IMG/VR virus record: IMGVR_UViG_3300028800_000001
Coordinates: 124,001 to 188,000 of that record
Strand: one strand, 5' to 3'
Length of the DNA: 64,000 nt
Part shown: positions 27,930 to 35,686 of the stretch, piece after piece
Numbering within the stretch: the first letter of the stretch is position 1
Layout of the letters: each line of letters opens with the position of its first letter
Notes under the pieces: generated by a model
Databases searched by the model: none
What the model saw: only the letters and a program-made list of their open reading frames with translations
What the model was told of the DNA's origin: nothing
Position numbers and translations under genes: made by a program

Positions 27930-28592
27930 TTAATTTGCAACATAGTAAAGCTGGCTTGTAATCTCGAAAGAGAGACTTTCGTCCACCGTCGCGTTCACGG
28001 CCTGCTTGAGTTGATCCTGTTTGATATAGCCGTATGCTTCGTAGCGCGGCCCGTTTTGTGGTGCTGGCCCTGATAGCGCATCGGTAAAGAGAATAAACAC
28101 CATCAGCGCGCCTGCGCTCATCAGACTCAGAAAAGAGCCGTCATTATAAAATTTGGCAAAGCTGCCAGACGCCTTGAGCTGTCCTGGGATTTGAATCTTC
28201 CAGGCATTCGTAAAGGTCGAAGCATCATAGATATCACTATCCATAGAAAGATCCCAACTGTGCCCATCACCAAGCGCTGAATAGGTAAAGTAATTCCCTG
28301 AGACGCGCACAAACGTATTCGTGTTCGGAACACTAAAGACCAGGGCTCCGCCAACATACTGCGCGGTATAATTCGTCACGGTTGCCCATCCACCTGAGCC
28401 AGTAGCCGACGTTTGTACCGTGAGCGGTTGCGTGTTATCCCAATAGCGCTGCGTATACGTTCCAGACGGCGTCGTGTAGTGTTGATGATCACCACTATCG
28501 GTCATCGCCATATTGGTAAAAGAAACAGAAGGGGTTGCCGTGATATAAACGTTTCCCCTGTAGCCACTTACAGCAGACATAAATGCCTCCAA
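27930..28592 (-). CDS. tail tube protein paralog with about 90-aa insertion
   Basis: MSAVSGYRGNVYI and WDLSMDSDIYDASTF.NAWK.QIPG align with the neighbouring tube protein. Confidence 0.7.
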   Translation of the reverse strand: MEAFMSAVSGYRGNVYITATPSVSFTNMAMTDSGDHQHYTTPSGTYTQRYWDNTQPLTVQTSATGSGGWATVTNYTAQYVGGALVFSVPNTNTFVRVSGNYFTYSALGDGHSWDLSMDSDIYDASTFTNAWKIQIPGQLKASGSFAKFYNDGSFLSLMSAGALMVFILFTDALSGPAPQNGPRYEAYGYIKQDQLKQAVNATVDESLSFEITSQLYYVAN

Positions 28593-28680
28593 AACACAAA
28601 AAGAGACTAACGTCTTTTATTTTCGTTAATCTCTTATGAATATTTTGAAGGAAGAATGCAGTATACGCCCTATATACATC

Positions 28681-29073
28681 TTACGTATACGATAATGTGC
28701 CGCTACCCTCGAAGGATATGGATACATCGACTGTTGCGGAAACTGCCGTTTTCACGCTCATCTGCTTGATAAATGCGGTTCCCGAATAGTTATGCGTCCC
28801 ATCAGTGAAGAGCGCAAGAGCAATGCTGGTACCGCCAAAGAGTCCGGCCTGTATAAGCGCCTGTCCGGTGCTGTCTCCCTGGTATTGACGACCACTGAAA
28901 GAGCCAGACCATTTTTTGAGTCCTGGGATTTGGGTTTTCCAGGCGTTAGGAAAGGAAGAAGTATCGTAGATGTCGGCGTCAATACTGAGATCCCATTTGT
29001 CGATCTCAAGAACGACGTTTGTGGAAATTTTTACACTTCCGGCGTAGCCTGCAATTGCGGTCATATCGTGCAA
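28681..29073 (-). CDS. major tail tube protein
   Basis: MTAIAGYAGSV..EIDKWDLSIDAD..D...WKTQIPGLKKWSGSFSG...SISFEGSGTL; ATG at 29064. Confidence 0.8.
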   Translation of the reverse strand: MHDMTAIAGYAGSVKISTNVVLEIDKWDLSIDADIYDTSSFPNAWKTQIPGLKKWSGSFSGRQYQGDSTGQALIQAGLFGGTSIALALFTDGTHNYSGTAFIKQMSVKTAVSATVDVSISFEGSGTLSYT

Positions 29074-29075
29074 CT

Positions 29076-29195
29076 CCTCAAAGAAAAATCATCATCTCGT
29101 CTTTGCGTTTTCTTTGTTTCATGATGATTTTTCTTTGAGGTACAAAAAAGAGAGAATTTGGGGTGATTGCGATTTCCAAATTCTCTCTTTTTTGT
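29076..29195 (-). promoter_or_regulatory. two adjacent perfect 20-bp hairpins in the tail-tube leader
   Basis: arms 29076-29095/29121-29140 and 29142-29161/29176-29195 are exact reverse complements. Confidence 0.75.
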
Positions 29196-29219
29196 GTTAT
29201 TTACAGGTGGATACCCCTT

Positions 29220-29248
29220 ATACTAGCAGAGAATTGGCCCCGCGTCAA
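29220..29248 (-). promoter_or_regulatory. sigma70-type promoter toward tail tube genes
   Basis: TTGACG-17 nt-TAGTAT. Confidence 0.55.
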
Positions 29249-29270
29249 GAGAAAATGCGTTTTTCCCCGA

Positions 29271-29330
29271 TCTGAAAATACGGCGTAAAAATGCTTGACG
29301 TAAAACGCACGATAGGCTATACTTCCTGTA
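29271..29330 (+). promoter_or_regulatory. repeated strong promoter element, copy 1
   Basis: TCTGAAAATAC-N13-TTGACG-N17-TATACTTCCTGTA. Confidence 0.85.
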
Positions 29331-29371
29331 TAAGAAATAAACGAAAACAAAATTCAAGGAGAAATAAAAAA

Positions 29372-29644
29372 ATGAACAAAACTTTCAAAATAGAGTTCGA
29401 CCTGAATCCGGCAAGCCTGAACAGCATTCGTGATTACTTCTTCCTGGCAAGTTTCGCGCAAGACGCGCCCAAAGAGCACAACGAAGCCTGCGCACAAATC
29501 GCACGCGCACTGTCTAGCGACCGTTATAGCAATCACGCAAGCGAGCGCGCCCGTTACTTCGAGCGTATTATCAAAGACGCATCCAGCGAGGCCGCTCGTG
29601 CCATCTATAAAGAAGCTCAAGCCCTGTGCAGAAGTGCACGATAA
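29372..29644 (+). CDS. hypothetical protein
   Basis: AAGGAG RBS then MNKTFKIEF; 90 aa. Confidence 0.65.
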   Translation: MNKTFKIEFDLNPASLNSIRDYFFLASFAQDAPKEHNEACAQIARALSSDRYSNHASERARYFERIIKDASSEAARAIYKEAQALCRSAR

Positions 29645-29660
29645 TAGAAAACAGTCCAGC

Positions 29661-29690
29661 GCCTCTCTTTTTATAAGAGAGGCCATTTTT
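29661..29690 (+). terminator. putative intrinsic terminator
   Basis: GCCTCTCTT-N5-AAGAGAGGC followed by CATTTTT. Confidence 0.55.
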
Positions 29691-29728
29691 CATAACGAAA
29701 CCTATATTCAACACCTGGAGGAACCAGC

Positions 29729-30046
29729 ATGAAAGCTATCTCACTTGGCGTGCGCCTGCACGAAGAACATCGCGATTGTATCGAGGAAGATCTACAAGAA
29801 CAACTCGATCCCAACTTTCTCTTCTTTGAAAATACCTATGCCCCTGACGAAGAAATAGATCAAGCAGATATTATCAACCAACTCCATGACTACCTGCGGT
29901 GGGGAGATAGCGTTGCCCTCATTTTCCTGGGGCGCTGCTACATCCCTATGCTACTACTCGTGATCAACAATGAACTCTTTAACCTCAACTGCGATGTAAC
30001 CTACACTGCCGTAAAGGAAGCTGTTTCTGAAAATACAGAGAAATAA
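29729..30046 (+). CDS. acidic hypothetical protein
   Basis: GGAGG RBS; 105 aa. Confidence 0.6.
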   Translation: MKAISLGVRLHEEHRDCIEEDLQEQLDPNFLFFENTYAPDEEIDQADIINQLHDYLRWGDSVALIFLGRCYIPMLLLVINNELFNLNCDVTYTAVKEAVSENTEK

Positions 30047-30085
30047 CCCTTGACGTTTCCTCTCGAATGACGTATACTTCCTGTA
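30026..30085 (+). promoter_or_regulatory. repeated strong promoter element, copy 2
   Basis: TCTGAAAATAC-N13-TTGACG-N17-TATACTTCCTGTA. Confidence 0.85.
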
Positions 30086-30122
30086 GAAGAAATAAACGAA
30101 ACATTCAAGGAGAAACAAACAA

Positions 30123-30704
30123 ATGGGCAAACATAGAAATAAAAAGAACAAAAGACAGCAGTATACGCAGGAAAGCATGCAAAAGCTTCTACAACAGGTT
30201 GTGGTGCATAGTAATAAAATCCTTGTGCATGACGCAAAGTGGATTGCGCTTTATAAAACGGCTGGTGGTTTCACCTACGCCGAGCGTCGTGGGCGCGACA
30301 GCGTTGGTATTCTCCTCACCCGTAACAACGGCACCGAAGTGCTCCTGCGTTGTCAGCCACTCTGTGCCGACTACTCTCATTACTACGGCTGTCCGGTGAC
30401 CGGAAGTATCGACCACGACGGCGAAAGCATTGACGCCTGCGCCATCCGCGAAGTGTTAGAGGAGACCGGTTACGTAATCCGCGAAGTGGAGCTCTTAACC
30501 AAATATATCACCGGTACACAGACCAACGAGCAGGTATATCTCTACACCGCTGATGTCACCGGAATCACTCCTGGTAAAGACATGAACGAAGAGATGGGCG
30601 AGGCAGGAGAAAACGTGTGGATACCCCTAGAGATGATGCTGGAATGCCGCTATAGCGGTACACTAATCGGATACACCTTCTTAAAGGCGCGCTGCGCTGC
30701 CTAA
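30123..30704 (+). CDS. Nudix hydrolase
   Basis: Nudix box GSIDHDGESIDACAIREVLEETGY. Confidence 0.88.
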   Translation: MGKHRNKKNKRQQYTQESMQKLLQQVVVHSNKILVHDAKWIALYKTAGGFTYAERRGRDSVGILLTRNNGTEVLLRCQPLCADYSHYYGCPVTGSIDHDGESIDACAIREVLEETGYVIREVELLTKYITGTQTNEQVYLYTADVTGITPGKDMNEEMGEAGENVWIPLEMMLECRYSGTLIGYTFLKARCAA

Positions 30705-30719
30705 GAAGTTCAAACAAAG

Positions 30720-30745
30720 AAGAGACGGTAAAGCGCCGTCTCTTT
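30720..30745 (+). terminator. hairpin between Nudix and kinase genes (possible weak terminator)
   Basis: AAGAGACGG-N7-CCGTCTCTT; short U tract. Confidence 0.4.
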
Positions 30746-30766
30746 CATGCATGTAAGGAGAAAAAT

Positions 30767-32119
30767 ATGATCGCCTGTCCTGGTTGTGCCACAACCGCAC
30801 GCGCAACCGCGAAATATTGTCAAACGTGCGGTGCATCCCTTACCGCCACAGGAAATCTCACCGGTATCCTGGCTGGAAAGTACCTCATCACTGGTGTTCT
30901 TGGACAAGGTGGTATGGGAGCCGTCTACAAAGCGCTGGATAGCACCATCAATCGTGTCGTTGCGATCAAAGAGATGAGCCAGAGCACGCTGGTTGGACTG
31001 GAATATCAAAAAGCGGTCACCGCATTTAAAAATGAAGCGCGCCTACTTGGAAACCTTCGTCATCCAATGCTACCTGCTATCTACGAGAACTTCACGGAAA
31101 ACGGACGTTGGTATCTGGCAATGGAATATATCGAAGGCAAAACGCTTGAAGACGTAATGCACACGCCTGATCTGGCTGCGCTGCTACGTTATGGCCCACA
31201 GCTTTGCGATGTACTCACTTTCTTGCATACTCAAAATATCACCTTTCGCGATATCAAACCAGCCAATATCATGATTACGCCAGAGGACGAAGTACGTCTG
31301 ATCGACTTTGGGATTGCACGCTTCTTTGCGGCCAACACCAAAGATACCAGCGCTCTTGGCTCGCCTGGATATGCGGCCCCTGAGCAGTACAAAAAGGGCT
31401 CTGAACCAAAGAGTGATGTCTATGCACTTGGCGCGCTCTTTCATTTTTTACTCAGTGGCACTGATCCTTCTGATGCCCCATTTCAGTTTGTGTCACTACC
31501 AAAGGTAACACATCCAGCGCTTCTGCGTCTCAATCGCTTAGTGGAAGAAATGATTACGCTGGACAAAGCGAACCGACCTGATAGTTTCGCTGTCCAGGCA
31601 CGATTGATCAGCATTCGCGATGACTATCGCAGCAATCCAATGATTGCCGCACCAAAGGCTGATGCCACCGTGTTTCTCATTTCCTCCATGTTAGACGGCA
31701 AAACCGAGAAGGATAAAATGCTCTTGGAACGTCTTGAGAAATCAATTGTCCTGGTTGGAAAAATGCGTGGCAAAACCATTGCCTGTGAATACATCGCACC
31801 AACAGTGAAAGAAGTAGAACGCATCATGCGCGAGAGCGGCATTATCCTGGTTGTCTGTACTCCGGCAATCCTTACCAACGAATATGCGAGCGAAGCTGTG
31901 AACACAGCCATTGAGTACCGTACCAATCACCGTGATGAAGTACTCGTTGTTCCTATCTATGGAAAACAATGTGAGTGGGGAAAAAACTATCTCTACCTCA
32001 AAAATTATGCAGGTGGCCCAAGGGACCGCAAACCAATTGTACGTTCTAGCGGCTACAGCGACGAAGCGCTCAATGAGATTGGGTTGACCGTCTATCAAGT
32101 CCTAGAGGAGAAATTTTAA
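30767..32119 (+). CDS. Hanks-type Ser/Thr protein kinase with N-terminal zinc ribbon and C-terminal TIR-like domain
   Basis: CPGC...CQTC; GQGGMGAVY, AIKEM, FRDIKPANIM, DFG, GSPGYAAPEQ, SDVYALG; C-terminal flavodoxin-like pattern VFLISS..LERLEK..IILVVCTPAIL..Y..VVPIY (TIR call less certain). Confidence 0.9.
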   Translation: MIACPGCATTARATAKYCQTCGASLTATGNLTGILAGKYLITGVLGQGGMGAVYKALDSTINRVVAIKEMSQSTLVGLEYQKAVTAFKNEARLLGNLRHPMLPAIYENFTENGRWYLAMEYIEGKTLEDVMHTPDLAALLRYGPQLCDVLTFLHTQNITFRDIKPANIMITPEDEVRLIDFGIARFFAANTKDTSALGSPGYAAPEQYKKGSEPKSDVYALGALFHFLLSGTDPSDAPFQFVSLPKVTHPALLRLNRLVEEMITLDKANRPDSFAVQARLISIRDDYRSNPMIAAPKADATVFLISSMLDGKTEKDKMLLERLEKSIVLVGKMRGKTIACEYIAPTVKEVERIMRESGIILVVCTPAILTNEYASEAVNTAIEYRTNHRDEVLVVPIYGKQCEWGKNYLYLKNYAGGPRDRKPIVRSSGYSDEALNEIGLTVYQVLEEKF

Positions 32120-32652
32120 TGAACATTTTTTATACCGCAGATACGCATTTCGGCAGCAAGCGCACACTTGATCTGTCGCGTCGTCCTTTCCAAAGTGTTG
32201 AAGAGATGGATGAGGCCATGATTGCCAACTGGAATGCCCAGGTCAAATCAGGCGATCTCGTCTATCATCTGGGAGACTTTGGTAACTACAATGTGAGCCG
32301 TCGTCTAAATGGCGACATCGCTCTACTCTTTGGCAACTATGAGCGAGATGATCTGGAGAAAGGATTGGTCACGCTCGATACCCTGCGCGAAACGTTTTAC
32401 GCTATCTATAAAGAATTTTGCCTCATGCTTACGCTTGATCTTCAACATATTGCCCTGGTACACGAACCAAGTCATCGTCCACAAGGCATCTTTTCCCTCT
32501 TTGGACATATTCACGAGAAGCAACTGGTAAAAGTGAATAGCCTGAATGTGGGAGTGGACTGTCATCACTTCGCGCCCATCTCACAAGATGTGGTGCGCTT
32601 CTACCGAGAGGCCATCCAGAAACACTATGATGAGGAAGTCTTTCAACGCTAG
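32119..32652 (+). CDS. calcineurin-like metallophosphoesterase
   Basis: ADTHFG, LGDF, GNYE (usually GNHD), HEP, GHIH, NVGVD; TAATG-coupled to the kinase. Confidence 0.88.
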   Translation: MNIFYTADTHFGSKRTLDLSRRPFQSVEEMDEAMIANWNAQVKSGDLVYHLGDFGNYNVSRRLNGDIALLFGNYERDDLEKGLVTLDTLRETFYAIYKEFCLMLTLDLQHIALVHEPSHRPQGIFSLFGHIHEKQLVKVNSLNVGVDCHHFAPISQDVVRFYREAIQKHYDEEVFQR

Positions 32653-33059
32653 ATTCGTTCTTCGCTAAGAAAAACGTAACGCGCCACCAGATGCCTCGTG
32701 AGACCATCAGTATCACGCTGAACGGTCATCGTGTCTCGCTTCCCATAAATGAACACGTATCCTGGCATCGCTGGCAGTGCTGAATTATAATGTAAGAGTT
32801 CGTCCACGCGGTTAAACAACACCTCCATTTCCTCCATCCCCTGCGCCATACTCCAGATATGAATATTGAAGATCGTCAACCGCCCTTTTTCTGAGAAGAC
32901 ATCTTGTGGTGTTTCCATGCCGTCTGAGAGCACCAGGAAGGGGAATGCAGCGTTTTCAGGCACCTCATCATAGACAGCACAACCGTGATCAGCGAAGAAA
33001 GTATCAGCCTCCAGAAACGCATAAATAGCCTCTTGAAGCTGAAGCGTGGCCGTTCCCAC
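32649..33059 (-). CDS. tail terminator/completion protein (DUF3168-like), copy B
   Basis: LQEAIY..L, VYDEVPENAAFPFLVL, IHIWS, RHLVARY. Confidence 0.85.
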   Translation of the reverse strand: MGTATLQLQEAIYAFLEADTFFADHGCAVYDEVPENAAFPFLVLSDGMETPQDVFSEKGRLTIFNIHIWSMAQGMEEMEVLFNRVDELLHYNSALPAMPGYVFIYGKRDTMTVQRDTDGLTRHLVARYVFLSEERI

Positions 33060-33461
33060 CTAGCGCTCCTCAGCAAATACGTCATACTTGATGTCTACTT
33101 TTCTGGTCAGCCCATCACCCATACGTTGCGTCGAAAGCATTTTATACATCGTGTAAACCGTATCGTAGGTAGAGAGGTTAAAGCTATTGCGATTGAGCAG
33201 CACATCTACTCGATCCGCAATAGTGAGCGACTCTTTGAAACCCTTCTGCATAGAATAAATGGAGACCGTAATGGTGGCAATGCGCCCCTTACGTGCAAAG
33301 GTATCCAATGGTGTCTCAGTGGCATCCCCCAGGACAAGATACGGAAACGTCCTGTTTTCTGGCACTTCATCGTACATTCCAGGCACCAGCGCAAGTAGCG
33401 CGGCGTCCGTAGAAAGAACGCCATAAACCGCCTGCTGTATCTGTTGCGTTGCTGTGCCCAA
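33060..33461 (-). CDS. tail terminator/completion protein (DUF3168-like), copy A
   Basis: IQQAVYGVL, YDEVPENRTFPYLVLGD, ITVSIYS. Confidence 0.85.
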   Translation of the reverse strand: MGTATQQIQQAVYGVLSTDAALLALVPGMYDEVPENRTFPYLVLGDATETPLDTFARKGRIATITVSIYSMQKGFKESLTIADRVDVLLNRNSFNLSTYDTVYTMYKMLSTQRMGDGLTRKVDIKYDVFAEER

Positions 33462-33470
33462 AGTGTGCTC

Positions 33471-33839
33471 CTAAAGATCGATTGATTCCATGTCCGAAAA
33501 GAAGCTTGGCTGTACCTCAAAAAAGGCACGCGAGATAAACGGATTGGCTGGTACGAAAGAGCGATGATTGCGTGTGAAGTGACCAAAGTGGACAAAGTTT
33601 TGGTAGGTCGTAGCACCATCAGGAATGCCAGCCGCGCCCACAATCGTGTCTCCTACCTGTGTTGCAGGATCGCTAGTAATTGCTTGTTGCAACCGTCCGG
33701 TTTTGCCAACAGGGCAATAATCAATCGACAATTGTGTGCAAGTGTTGACCGTGTCATCTACGACTTCCATTGCCCCCTGCTGGACTTTGATCAGTTCCGC
33801 GTCGAGCGCCGCAAGAACAGCGTCTAATCCTTCAAGCAT
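33471..33839 (-). CDS. HK97 gp10-like neck protein
   Basis: CPVGKTGRLQQAI, FVHFGHFT, PANPFISRAF. Confidence 0.8.
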   Translation of the reverse strand: MLEGLDAVLAALDAELIKVQQGAMEVVDDTVNTCTQLSIDYCPVGKTGRLQQAITSDPATQVGDTIVGAAGIPDGATTYQNFVHFGHFTRNHRSFVPANPFISRAFFEVQPSFFSDMESIDL

Positions 33840-34846: not shown

Positions 34847-35152
34847 TTACTCCGCTACTTCGATCTGGTCAGTCATGCCCCGTTTCTGCCTACCGCGCCT
34901 GGGAGTCGCTTCTGGTACATCCCCTTCCGGTACGTCGGACGTGCCGCTCTCGTCACTCTTGAACTCGTTAGGACCAGGGGCGTTGTAACCTGCTTCTTTA
35001 ACTTGTTCCGCCGCGCCTGCGCGAAGAAATGACTCAGCCAATTCAAAGGGGAGCGGATAGCCGCTAACCACATATTCTTCATCTTTTTTATATTCAAGTA
35101 CATGCGTTCCATTTGGTGATCCCTTGGTCGTCTGCAACATACGAATTTTCAT
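34847..35152 (-). CDS. hypothetical head-region protein, paralog B
   Basis: N-terminus MKIRMLQTTKGSPNGTH..EY matches the neighbour's MRIRMLQTTTGSYDGTH..EY. Confidence 0.65.
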   Translation of the reverse strand: MKIRMLQTTKGSPNGTHVLEYKKDEEYVVSGYPLPFELAESFLRAGAAEQVKEAGYNAPGPNEFKSDESGTSDVPEGDVPEATPRRGRQKRGMTDQIEVAE

Positions 35153-35200: not shown

Positions 35201-35686
35201 TTACTTTTTCGGTCTTTCAGGAAAATTAGGTTTTTCCTGAGTATCCGGCTTCCCCATAGAATCCGGTTTTTCTGCGGCATTGGGTTTTGTCGCAGAACCG
35301 GAGTCCCTCATAGAACTAGGCTTGCCTGCATCATCATGTCTGGCTGTAAAATCAGGAGTAGCCGGATTTTCTGCGTTCTCATGTCTGGCTGTAAAATCAG
35401 GACTTTTTGGAGTTGGTTCTCCAGCAGGTTCCTCTTCAACAGAACTTGCATGAAGCGATTGGTGAGGAACAACCTGTCCTTCTCTTGGCTCAGTCTCCTG
35501 TATCTCAACAGCCACATTACTTGCGAGAAATGATGCTGCCAAGTCTTTCGAGATGAGGTCGTGCCCAACGCTGTATTCTTGCCCAATCTCATACTCTTTA
35601 GTGTGTGTTCCGTCATAGGAACCAGTAGTTGTCTGAAGCATTCGAATTCTCATGGTTTTCTCCTCGTATAGTGAGAAGAGAAGCAT
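35201..35686 (-). CDS. hypothetical head-region protein, paralog A
   Basis: same N-terminal module plus a low-complexity tail; likely start MRIRML. Confidence 0.65.
   Translation of the reverse strand: MLLFSLYEEKTMRIRMLQTTTGSYDGTHTKEYEIGQEYSVGHDLISKDLAASFLASNVAVEIQETEPREGQVVPHQSLHASSVEEEPAGEPTPKSPDFTARHENAENPATPDFTARHDDAGKPSSMRDSGSATKPNAAEKPDSMGKPDTQEKPNFPERPKK
35334..35402. repeat. 24-bp direct repeat x2, 45-bp period (PDFTARH)
   Basis: TCATGTCTGGCTGTAAAATCAGGA at 35334 and 35379. Confidence 0.85.

What the first reader, a model, noticed from the sequence alone, without database searches (positions are those of the whole stretch)
29271..32652. Inverted Nudix / kinase-TIR-like / metallophosphoesterase signalling cassette inside the tail operon
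Seen: five plus-strand genes with two repeated strong promoters interrupt the minus-strand morphogenesis operon between the tail terminator and tail tube genes. They include a Nudix hydrolase, a zinc-ribbon Hanks kinase and a TAATG-coupled calcineurin-like phosphoesterase with GNYE in place of GNHD. The kinase's last ~150 aa (from about 31664) show the strand/helix and motif spacing of bacterial TIR domains. Known: TIR domains are NADases or signal producers in Thoeris-type immunity, with a catalytic Glu after a W/Y-C-x-x motif; here the region reads YASEA, so catalysis is uncertain. Nudix and metallophosphoesterases can hydrolyse ADP-ribose or nucleotide signals. Inference: a phage-encoded writer/eraser module that either jams host nucleotide or phosphorylation signalling (anti-defence) or defends the infected cell against competing phages.
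Basis: partly seen in the sequence, partly recalled or inferred. Interest (0 to 1): 0.78.

Follow-up and report, generated by a model that had tools for sequence, protein, structure and literature searches.

The report
Swappable accessory gene island in jumbo phage
A 3.4-kb island of five genes with its own promoters sits inside the tail genes of a 327-kb soil phage; related phages carry different genes at this spot, only the Nudix hydrolase is shared, and the TIR immune-type domain fused to a kinase here seems to have lost its catalytic residue, so it looks like an anti-immunity toolkit rather than a signal-making system.

Summary
Five + strand genes lie between the tail-tube and tail-terminator genes of a complete 327,295-bp metagenomic jumbo phage. 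They are orfA, orfB, a Nudix hydrolase, a Zn-ribbon Hanks kinase with a C-terminal domain, and a TAATG-coupled metallophosphoesterase (MPE). Two near-identical promoter-plus-leader units drive them.

The C-terminal 150 aa is a TIR domain by profile and fold evidence. However, the catalytic Glu column is Ala377, as in its only close relative, and the BB-loop is shortened. It is probably not an NADase or signal writer.

Three related phages share the flanks (64-95% aa identity) but carry different cargo here:
- all three have the Nudix;
- two have the TIR-like domain, which is a stand-alone gene directly after the Nudix in one of them;
- only this phage has the kinase and the MPE.

The MPE belongs to a family found in 1,152 GenBank phage records. 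GNYERD is a conserved signature of its subfamily, not decay.

The three-gene writer/eraser model is therefore not supported. A variable island with a Nudix core and a frequent pseudo-TIR partner is supported. It most plausibly counters host NAD/TIR-type immunity; that function is inferred, not shown.

The parts
29196..32658 (.). Variable island: the stretch with no DNA homology to the closest relative (L153), apart from 134 nt inside the Nudix gene
   Evidence: blastn: window/L153 homology (82%) ends at 29195 and resumes (76%) at 32659. The L153 interval is only about 1.9 kb.
29295..29371 (+). Promoter P1 (TTGACG-17-TATACT, 29295-29323) plus a conserved unstructured A-rich leader with an AAGGAG SD
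   Evidence: The leader folds no better than shuffles.
29372..29644 (+). orfA, 90 aa, function unknown
   Evidence: No Pfam, PHROG, NCBIfam or PADLOC match. No homologue in L153 or L014.
29661..29683 (+). Terminator-like hairpin with a T run, after orfA
   Evidence: 9-bp stem, followed by CATTTTTCAT.
29729..30046 (+). orfB, 105 aa, small four-stranded Rossmann-like protein; its family has three paralogues in the L153 island
   Evidence: blastp (27-35% identity, down to 4e-13). Alignment A7. AF2 pLDDT 85.5, b-a-b-a-b-a-b. No significant PDB match. The Csx20/MJ1673 resemblance is only a lead.
30050..30122 (+). Promoter P2 (30050-30078) plus the same leader, driving Nudix and, by read-through, the kinase-TIR and MPE genes
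   Evidence: No promoter-like site between 30705 and 30766.
30123..30704 (+). Nudix hydrolase, 193 aa. The Nudix box at aa 94-116 has an intact RE-x2-EE and one extra residue (G-x6-E). The basic 32-aa N-terminal extension is absent from homologues. This is the only gene shared by all three related islands.
30719..30745 (.). 11-bp hairpin between the Nudix and kinase genes. The U tract is poor on the + strand and better on the - strand, so it is more likely an attenuator, an RNA end, or a stop for antisense late transcripts than a full + strand terminator.
30776..30829 (+). Zn ribbon (CPGC...CQTC, aa 4-21)
30866..31636 (+). Hanks-type Ser/Thr kinase domain with all catalytic motifs: G-loop 46-51, K68, E90, FRD D162, N167, DFG 180-182, APE 204-206
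31664..32116 (+). TIR-like domain (aa 300-450). The catalytic-Glu column is Ala377 (31895-31897), preceded by Glu376. The BB-loop region is about 12 aa shorter than in bona fide TIRs, and the bA-aA loop carries a 6-aa insert.
32119..32652 (+). Metallophosphoesterase, 177 aa, start overlapping the kinase stop (TAATG). Metal-binding motifs are intact (D8, H10, D53, N73, H115, H130, H132). The GNYERD signature is shared with orthologues.
28681..29073 (-). Left flank: tail-tube-like gene (94% aa identity in L153)
32649..33059 (-). Right flank: tail terminator 1 (86% aa identity in L153, 64% in L014). Its stop overlaps the MPE stop.

Best explanation
The locus is a fast-turnover accessory island. 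It sits at a fixed site between the tail-tube and tail-terminator genes of a lineage of rhizosphere jumbo phages and is transcribed against the late operon from its own promoters.

Shown:
- The island is bounded by conserved flanks, and the cargo differs among three related phages.
- The constant element is a phage-specific Nudix hydrolase with an intact catalytic box.
- In two of the three phages the Nudix is followed by a divergent TIR domain that lacks the canonical catalytic Glu and has a shortened BB-loop.
- In this phage that pseudo-TIR is fused behind a catalytically complete Zn-ribbon Hanks kinase and translationally coupled to a common phage metallophosphoesterase.
- The promoter and leader belong to a class of about 12 units in the genome, which mostly drive small genes with no recognisable function.

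Inferred:
- The promoters match the host sigma-70 consensus and the phage carries its own sigma factor, so the island is probably expressed early by unmodified host RNA polymerase.
- Its job is counter-defence against NAD+/ADP-ribose-based host immunity, such as TIR systems. The Nudix would destroy an ADP-ribose-type product or signal.
- The dead TIR would act as a binder or decoy, either docking on host TIR assemblies or holding their nucleotide product.
- In this phage the TIR would also bring a kinase to that target.
- The MPE would either reverse the phosphorylation or process a phosphate-bearing product.
For: Island status:
- blastn break points at 29195 and 32659.
- L153 flanks are 86-95% aa identical, but its cargo is orfB-like / Nudix / 91 aa / orfB-like / orfB-like.
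- L014 cargo is Nudix / stand-alone TIR-like (4-nt gap) / three small ORFs.
- Nudix identity is only 63-66% between phages whose tube proteins are 94-95% identical.
- An X1 contig joins 29079 to 32723 at lower depth.
- The L153-type variant (L154) and a copy of this phage (L002) come from the same metagenome.

TIR identity:
- phmmer against 1.84 billion representatives gave P0002 plus three TIR_2 proteins among its five non-self hits.
- hhalign probability 95.5%, E 1.4e-8.
- The PDB profile search hit Cat1, MAL and AbTIR.
- ESM Atlas TM 0.74-0.78.
- VIA-align Z 12.3 to the RPS4 TIR.

Loss of catalysis: Ala at the Glu column in both phage proteins, and a BB-loop deletion.

Kinase intact.

Promoter class and sigma factor. 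No RNA polymerase beta subunit was found.

NAD/ADPR theme:
- The phage also has a Macro-domain gene and a second Nudix.
- An independent member of this Nudix family lies beside three TIR_2 genes on a cyanobacterial contig.
- A published survey argues that phage Nudix, Macro and similar domains mainly counter ADPr-derived signals, and that phage TIRs are rare (PMC9503650).
Against: - No function was tested.
- The Nudix substrate class is ambiguous. The best weak hits are split between RNA pyrophosphohydrolase (YtkD/RppH) and ADP-ribose/NDP-sugar pyrophosphatases.
- One of the three related phages has the Nudix without any TIR-like gene, and five other viral contexts of the family show no TIR. 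The pairing is therefore not obligatory.
- The two phage pairings share ancestry and count as one event.
- Glu376, one residue before the canonical position, could conceivably substitute in this protein.
- The host is unknown, so it is not known whether it has TIR immunity.
- The MPE family usually sits among RNA- and nucleotide-metabolism genes.
- In the literature I searched, no known anti-defence protein is a Nudix or a TIR.
Confidence: 0.4

Rival explanations
1. Host-takeover phospho-switch. The kinase phosphorylates host proteins early in infection, and the coupled MPE is its counter-phosphatase or limiter. The TIR-like domain is only an oligomerisation or regulatory module. The Nudix is an unrelated neighbour, for example an RNA 5'-end or NAD-cap pyrophosphohydrolase that speeds host mRNA decay.
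For: - The kinase is intact.
- The TAATG coupling to the MPE suggests stoichiometric co-expression.
- A hairpin separates the Nudix from the kinase.
- The Nudix has top weak hits to YtkD/RppH and a basic N-terminal extension unique to this phage.
- Phage kinases that remodel the host or block defences are known (PMC12345140, listed).
Against: - The MPE family is widespread without kinases, and its subfamily is not known to be a protein phosphatase.
- The TIR-like domain exists as a stand-alone gene directly after the Nudix in L014, so it has a kinase-independent role tied to the Nudix.
- No promoter precedes the kinase gene, so it depends on P2.
Confidence: 0.25
2. No joint function. The site is a recombination hot spot that collects unrelated accessory genes, and the adjacency of the Nudix, kinase-TIR and MPE genes is historical accident.
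For: The cargo differs in every relative. The kinase and MPE are unique to this phage. The Nudix family occurs in many unrelated contexts.
Against: Nudix followed by TIR-like recurs in a phage only 64-80% identical in its flanks, with a 4-nt gap. An unrelated cyanobacterial contig also pairs this Nudix family with TIR genes. The kinase and MPE genes are translationally coupled.
Confidence: 0.2
3. A writer/eraser signalling module in which the TIR domain makes an NAD-derived signal and the Nudix and MPE erase it, either to jam host signalling or to defend the infected cell against competing phages.
For: A TIR fold and a Nudix are present. Published analysis proposes signal 'toggles' in jumbo phages, where signal-making domains are fused to degrading domains (PMC7824862). 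The kinase domain scores on PADLOC PD-T4-6 and MAD6 kinase models.
Against: - The catalytic Glu column is Ala in both family members, and the BB-loop needed for active-site assembly is truncated.
- The three genes never co-occur elsewhere.
- The PADLOC hits cover only the generic kinase domain. No Thoeris effector or other defence model matches.
Confidence: 0.08

Closest known systems
Bacterial TIR_2 (PF13676) domains of multicellular bacteria, e.g. Nostoc TIR protein WP_094346031.1 (P0005) and multi-TIR proteins P0003/P0004
   Same: They show significant sequence similarity (phmmer 1.8e-7 to 7.6e-5 against 1.84 billion proteins). They share the fold and the 'IP(V/I)..x.C.W' bD motif.
   Different: The phage domain has Ala at the catalytic Glu, lacks the W/PG BB-loop segment, has a 6-aa insert after bA, and is encoded by a virus.
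Non-enzymatic adaptor or antagonist TIR domains (MAL/TIRAP, MyD88; bacterial TcpB/BtpA)
   Same: They are among the best profile and fold matches. They act by TIR-TIR contacts rather than catalysis, which is the mode proposed here.
   Different: There is no evidence here for any TIR-TIR interaction. These are animal or pathogen proteins, not phage proteins. BtpA retains NADase activity (from my own knowledge, not checked here).
Bacterial Pkinase + TIR_2 fusion proteins (ESM Atlas cluster, about 649 aa, 80 members)
   Same: Same two-domain combination, and the top feature-based neighbour of the whole protein (score 0.96).
   Different: They are bacterial and longer. Their sequences could not be retrieved, so neither domain order nor TIR catalytic status was compared. 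None of the 80 nearest genomic kinase homologues has a TIR nearby.
Phage counter-defences against NAD/ADPR immunity (Tad1/Tad2 sponges, RyDEP glycosidase, NARP1-3; phage Macro/NADAR/Nudix as surveyed in PMC9503650)
   Same: A phage-encoded, early-type accessory locus with an ADPR-class hydrolase candidate. Cargo is variable among close relatives.
   Different: None of the known proteins is a TIR or this Nudix family. No sequence match to any was seen in Pfam or PHROGs. The activity here is untested.
phrog_547 phage metallophosphoesterases (e.g. Enterococcus phage iF6 gp33, Vibrio phage D479 VPHD479_0068)
   Same: About 50% aa identity, the same length, all metal motifs and the GNYERD signature.
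   Different: There they sit beside RNA ligase, GTP cyclohydrolase and dNMP kinase genes, or beside exoribonuclease and further MPE genes. Here the gene is coupled to a kinase-TIR gene inside a tail operon.

Membership tests
TIR domain (Pfam TIR_2, PF13676) | Sequence-profile membership | tested here: inconclusive
   The Pfam score is below the gathering cut-off (16.8 bits vs 28; 19 bits). However, three of the five non-self phmmer hits carry TIR_2 above the cut-off and the closest, P0002, just reaches it. hhalign against 10 bona fide TIR_2 domains gave probability 95.5%, E 1.4e-8. The A1 profile hits PDB TIRs at 1e-8 to 1e-5, but A1 contains bona fide TIR rows.
TIR domain (Pfam TIR_2, PF13676) | Flavodoxin-like a/b fold of TIR type | tested here: met
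   The ESM Atlas model aligns at TM 0.74-0.78 over 136-139 residues to ten clusters, nine of which carry TIR_2 or TIR families. For the AF2 model (pLDDT 71.5) the best seven VIA-align Z scores, 11.4-12.3, are TIR domains. REC domains follow closely at 11.3, so fold alone does not separate TIR from other flavodoxin-like folds.
Catalytic TIR NADase / signal synthase (ThsB, AbTIR, SARM1 type) | Conserved catalytic Glu in the aC helix (W/Y-C-x-x-E) | tested here: not met
   The column is Ala377 in this protein and Ala in P0002, in MAFFT alignments A1 and A4 and in hhalign. Glu376 lies one position earlier but is not conserved in P0002.
Catalytic TIR NADase / signal synthase (ThsB, AbTIR, SARM1 type) | BB-loop of normal length, needed for head-to-tail assembly and the composite active site | tested here: not met
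   Both phage proteins have a gap of about 12 residues where TIR_2 domains carry the W...PG segment.
Thoeris defence system | A ThsA-type effector (SIR2/SLOG, Macro or TM) next to the TIR gene | tested here: not met
   No PADLOC Thoeris model matches any island protein. The neighbours are Nudix, MPE and tail genes.
Hanks-type Ser/Thr protein kinase | G-loop, VAIK Lys, aC Glu, catalytic (H/F)RD Asp and Asn, DFG, APE | tested here: met
   All are present. Pkinase 2.6e-40.
PD-T4-6 / MAD6 defence kinases | Full-length model match and location in a bacterial defence locus | tested here: not met
   The best PADLOC matches cover mainly the kinase domain (aa 34-243 of the query for the top PD-T4-6 model), and none extends into the TIR-like part. 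The NCBIfam MAD6 score of 123 is far below its cut-off of 460. The gene is in a phage tail operon.
Nudix hydrolase | Nudix box G-x5-E-x7-R-E-U-x-E-E-x-G-U | tested here: met
   Present at aa 94-116 with one extra residue (G-x6-E). This variant is invariant across the family. PF00293 2.3e-14.
ADP-ribose pyrophosphatase subfamily of Nudix | Specific subfamily signature or score above the family cut-off | tested here: inconclusive
   All NCBIfam hits are far below their cut-offs. YtkD (RNA) and YffH/AdpP tie at about 3.5e-5. The PDB profile hits mix RppH, MTH1, ADPRase and NudK at 3e-4 to 8e-3.
Calcineurin-like metallophosphoesterase (phrog_547 subfamily) | Metal-ligand motifs DxH, GD, GN, H, GHxH | tested here: met
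   All are invariant in alignment A3. Tyr replaces the His of GNH(D/E), as in its orthologues, whereas paralogue iF6_32 has GNHD.
Known anti-Thoeris / anti-CBASS proteins (Tad1, Tad2, Acb1, Acb2, RyDEP) | Sequence or fold similarity to a characterised member | not tested
   No dedicated anti-defence library was available. Pfam and PHROGs gave no such names for any island protein.

The most novel reading that the evidence does not exclude
A lineage of jumbo phages uses a catalytically dead TIR domain as a viral decoy. It occurs alone, or in this phage welded to a Ser/Thr kinase. It would cap or poison host TIR immune assemblies, or capture their nucleotide product, while a dedicated Nudix partner erases ADP-ribose-derived signals. 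This would be the first phage anti-immunity strategy built on TIR mimicry, and the first case of a kinase targeted by a TIR domain.
Probability: 0.2. Interest if true: 0.85.

Novelty: new variant of a known kind. Interest (0 to 1): 0.55.

Why it matters
TIR domains are central to immunity in bacteria, plants and animals, but they are rarely found in viruses (PMC9503650). I found no report of a phage TIR that has lost its catalytic residue.

If the pseudo-TIR is a decoy or adaptor, it would extend to phages the TIR-mimicry logic known from bacterial pathogens and poxviruses. It would also give a handle on how TIR assemblies can be blocked.

The locus is also a clean natural experiment. Three related phages share identical flanks but carry different cargo, two of them in the same soil sample. 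That marks the site as a place to mine for new counter-defence genes, including the orfB Rossmann-like family and several genes with no recognisable family.

If the function proves to be ordinary host takeover, the finding reduces to a well-annotated accessory island.

Tried and rejected
Searches that found nothing:
- DNA similarity of the island to 50,697 GenBank phages: none.
- tblastn against the same phages: nothing for the Nudix or the TIR-like part, and only kinase-domain hits for the fusion.
- Word-index protein search on aa 295-450: self only.
- IMG/VR scans with the kinase, the Nudix, the terminator and the TIR alignment A5: only copies of this phage, or distant kinases and Nudix genes.
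- This Nudix family was not found in the 401 Chloroflexota genomes searched or in two genomes holding kinase homologues.
- Rfam on 28500-33500: only sub-threshold miRNA noise.

Ideas tested and rejected:
- The leader as a structured RNA element. It folds no better than shuffles.
- GNYE as a sign of MPE decay. It is conserved in orthologues.
- PADLOC PD-T4-6 hits as evidence of a defence system. They cover only the kinase domain.
- The orfB family as Csx20/CARF. The Atlas score is about 0.8 and TM 0.61, there is no Pfam or PDB sequence support, and the best Foldseek match is a designed Rossmann protein at E 8.5e-3. I kept it as a lead only.

Limits:
- Host assignment. The kinase's nearest genomic homologues are Anaerolineales (41-43%) and the TIR's nearest is Nostoc. 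These are hints only.
- No RNA run holding the phage was listed. The search was of kind 'any', not RNA-specific, so expression timing could not be checked.
The TIR model is only of moderate confidence and its central strands are poorly formed.

Full report
**Setting**

The window is G000:C1:124001-188000 of a single 327,295-bp contig (46.6% G+C). The contig is an IMG/VR virus record with direct terminal repeats and a CheckV completeness of 100%, so it is a complete metagenomic jumbo phage.
- Near-identical DNA occurs in at least eight rhizosphere metagenomes and in two IMG/VR fragments.
- Almost all long ORFs in the window are on the - strand.
- The phage encodes a sigma-70-family factor at G000:119574-119771. 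No RNA polymerase beta subunit was detected.

**Observation**

The + strand carries:
- orfA, 29372-29644;
- orfB, 29729-30046;
- a Nudix gene, 30123-30704;
- a 450-aa kinase fusion, 30767-32119;
- a 177-aa metallophosphoesterase (MPE), 32119-32652, whose ATG overlaps the kinase TAA.

Family matches and motifs:
- Nudix: PF00293 at 2.3e-14.
- Kinase: Pkinase at 2.6e-40, with a CxxC...CxxC ribbon in front.
- MPE: phrog_547 at 8e-37.
- The kinase has every catalytic motif.
- The Nudix box is intact with one extra residue.
- The MPE keeps all metal ligands and reads GNYE.

On the - strand the flanks are two tail-tube-like paralogues on one side and two tail-terminator (gp17-type) paralogues on the other.

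Two TTGACG-17-TATACT promoters, at 29295 and 30050, are each followed by the same A-rich, unstructured leader and an AAGGAG SD.

Three points need adjusting.
- The promoter-leader unit is a genome-wide class of about 12 copies, which mostly drive small proteins of unknown function.
- There is no promoter-like site between the Nudix and the kinase. P2 therefore most simply gives one Nudix / kinase-TIR / MPE transcript. The 11-bp hairpin at 30719-30745 has a poor U tract on the + strand and a better one on the - strand.
- The MPE and terminator-1 stop codons overlap (CTAG), so the convergent units have no spacer.

**The C-terminal domain is a TIR domain**

Pfam TIR_2 alone is sub-threshold (E 0.0096). 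The other lines of evidence agree with it.
- An exhaustive phmmer search of aa 295-450 against 1.84 billion representatives found only five non-self proteins at E up to 1e-3. One is a 146-aa stand-alone protein (P0002, 4e-11). Three are clear TIR_2 proteins (1.8e-7 to 7.6e-5). P0002 itself just reaches the TIR_2 cut-off.
- A profile of the two phage sequences aligns to ten bona fide TIR_2 domains with hhalign probability 95.5%, E 1.4e-8.
- A mixed profile hits solved TIRs: Cat1 1e-8, MAL about 1e-6, AbTIR 1.6e-5.
- The ESM Atlas model aligns at TM 0.74-0.78 to ten clusters, nine of which carry TIR_2 or TIR families.
- My AF2 model is only moderate (pLDDT 71.5). Its best seven VIA-align matches are still TIR domains (Z 11.4-12.3), with receiver domains just behind.

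**The TIR domain is probably not an enzyme**

In MAFFT alignments A1 and A4 and in hhalign, the catalytic Glu column of TIR NADases is Ala377 here and Ala in P0002. The next residue is hydrophobic, as in true TIRs, which anchors the register.

An acidic residue is therefore not a family feature.

Both phage proteins also lack about 12 residues of the BB-loop (the W...PG segment) and carry a 6-aa insert after the first strand.

From established knowledge of TIR enzymology, the Glu is essential and the BB-loop builds the composite active site in assemblies. That points to a pseudo-enzyme. Catalysis is not formally excluded for this one protein.

**Comparative genomics changes the picture**

Two related phage contigs share the site.

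L153 (and its twin L154):
- Its tube proteins are 94-95% identical and its terminators 86% identical to the window.
- Between them lie an orfB-like gene, a Nudix (63% identity), a 91-aa ORF and two more orfB-like genes.
- It has no TIR, kinase or MPE.
- DNA homology stops at window 29195 and resumes at 32659.

L014:
- Its terminators are 64-80% identical.
- It has a Nudix (66%), then after 4 nt the stand-alone TIR-like P0002 (36.5% to the window domain), then three unrelated small ORFs.
- Its Nudix has a related promoter and leader, as does the L153 island.

Other evidence on the variants:
- One lower-depth contig in run X1 joins 29079 to 32723. This is consistent with such a variant coexisting with this phage.
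- L154 comes from the same metagenome as a copy of this phage.

The Nudix is therefore the constant element, and the TIR-like domain is a frequent partner. The kinase and MPE are additions specific to this phage. The cargo evolves much faster than the flanks.

**Each component elsewhere**

MPE:
- The family is in 1,152 GenBank phage records, with about 50% identity to proteins of Enterococcus Schiekvirus phages and Vibrio phage D479.
- There it lies among RNA ligase, GTP cyclohydrolase and dNMP kinase genes, or among exoribonuclease and further MPE genes.
- GNYERD is conserved in these orthologues, while a paralogue has GNHD.

Nudix:
- The family has no hit in GenBank phages.
- It has a handful of metagenomic members in varied contexts.
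- One member lies on a cyanobacterial contig, next to three tandem TIR_2 genes. This is an independent, though single, Nudix-TIR association.

Kinase:
- Among the 89 nearest kinase homologues (80 genomic, 9 viral), none has a TIR-like gene within about 5 kb, and none has an MPE or Nudix of these families.
- A bacterial Pkinase+TIR_2 cluster exists in the ESM Atlas, so the domain pair is not unprecedented in cells.

orfB:
- orfB models confidently as a minimal four-stranded Rossmann-like protein (pLDDT 85.5).
- It has no significant structural or sequence relative.
- The Csx20/MJ1673 resemblance is a lead only.

**Interpretation**

The data support a variable accessory island with its own promoters. 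It is probably expressed early, because the promoters are of host consensus type while the phage brings its own sigma factor (inference).

I favour a counter-defence role against NAD/ADP-ribose-based immunity, at confidence 0.4. The reasons are:
- the Nudix plus pseudo-TIR core;
- the rapid turnover of the cargo;
- the Macro domain and the second Nudix elsewhere in the genome;
- the published argument that phage Nudix and Macro domains counter ADPr-derived signals (PMC9503650).

A dead TIR with a truncated BB-loop would be well suited to bind a TIR assembly without propagating it, or to hold a nucleotide. In this phage it could aim the kinase at that target. None of this was tested.

**Novelty and score**

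The locus is a new variant of a known kind, the phage accessory or anti-defence island. The unusual elements are:
- a virus-encoded TIR domain without the catalytic Glu;
- its fusion to an active Hanks kinase;
- a Nudix family found only in a handful of uncultured-phage and metagenomic contigs.

Interest is 0.55. It would rise to about 0.85 if TIR mimicry were demonstrated.

Noticed in passing
window 29295-29371, 30050-30122 and 63585 (- strand); genome G000 positions 32800, 86841, 89858, 117029, 216707, 217283, 257504, 303675, 309923: A conserved unit recurs about 12 times across the 327-kb genome: CTTGACG-N17-TATACTTCCTGTA, then AAGAAATAAACGAAA, then ATTCAAGGAGAAA, then ATG. Most of the genes it drives encode 64-238-aa proteins whose function was not examined. 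It looks like a dedicated, probably early, high-expression promoter/leader class. The repeats break the metagenome assemblies at these points.
   Followed up: partly
window 29094-29140: A perfect 20-bp inverted repeat (-27.2 kcal/mol, z -5.6) lies in the 5' untranslated region of the tail-tube gene. Its 3' arm on the - strand includes the GAGGAG SD. A matching inverted repeat is visible at the equivalent place in L153. It could be a translational switch or a bidirectional insulator at the island's left edge.
   Followed up: partly
window 27930-29073 and 32649-33461: The tail-tube-like gene (130 and 220 aa, 44% identity) and the tail terminator gene (136 and 133 aa, 41% identity) are each present as tandem paralogue pairs. 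The terminator pair is conserved in L153 and L014, and the tube pair in L153.
   Followed up: partly
window 34847-35152 and 35201-35686: Two adjacent - strand ORFs share an N-terminal motif (M-K/R-IRMLQTT-x-GS...GTH..EY) and then diverge. The second has a proline- and glutamate-rich tail. L153 also has a paralogue pair in its head-tail connector region (51-410 and 456-749, 42% identity).
   Followed up: no
L153 2951-4685 (- strand): The island of the closest relative holds three paralogues of the orfB Rossmann-like family plus a 91-aa ORF with no recognisable family. This expansion of a small nucleotide-binding-type fold is worth testing for nucleotide or signal binding.
   Followed up: partly
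L053 1077-5185 (metagenome contig Ga0247774_1004716, cyanobacterium-like: GXGXG, XisH and GUN4 domains): A member of the same Nudix family (44% identity) lies about 600 nt from three tandem TIR_2 genes: one TIR-GUN4 fusion and two double-TIR proteins. Most of these TIR domains have a Glu at the catalytic column; one has Gln and one is unclear. It may be a bacterial Nudix/TIR defence locus.
   Followed up: partly
G000:C1:2449-2760 (-), G000:C1:252467-252820 (+), G000:C1:119574-119771 (-): Elsewhere the phage encodes a Macro-domain protein, a second Nudix hydrolase and a sigma-70-family factor. No NAPRTase (NadV) was found.
   Followed up: partly
window 29079 / 32723 (run X1): One contig at about a fifth of the main depth (7.5 vs 35) joins the tube-gene upstream region directly to the 3' part of terminator 1, skipping 3,643 bases. 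A coexisting variant either lacks this cargo or carries other cargo.
   Followed up: partly
window 30123-30218: The Nudix of this phage has a 32-aa, strongly basic N-terminal extension (GKHRNKKNKRQQ...) that is absent from all four homologues. It might bind nucleic acid or target the protein.
   Followed up: no
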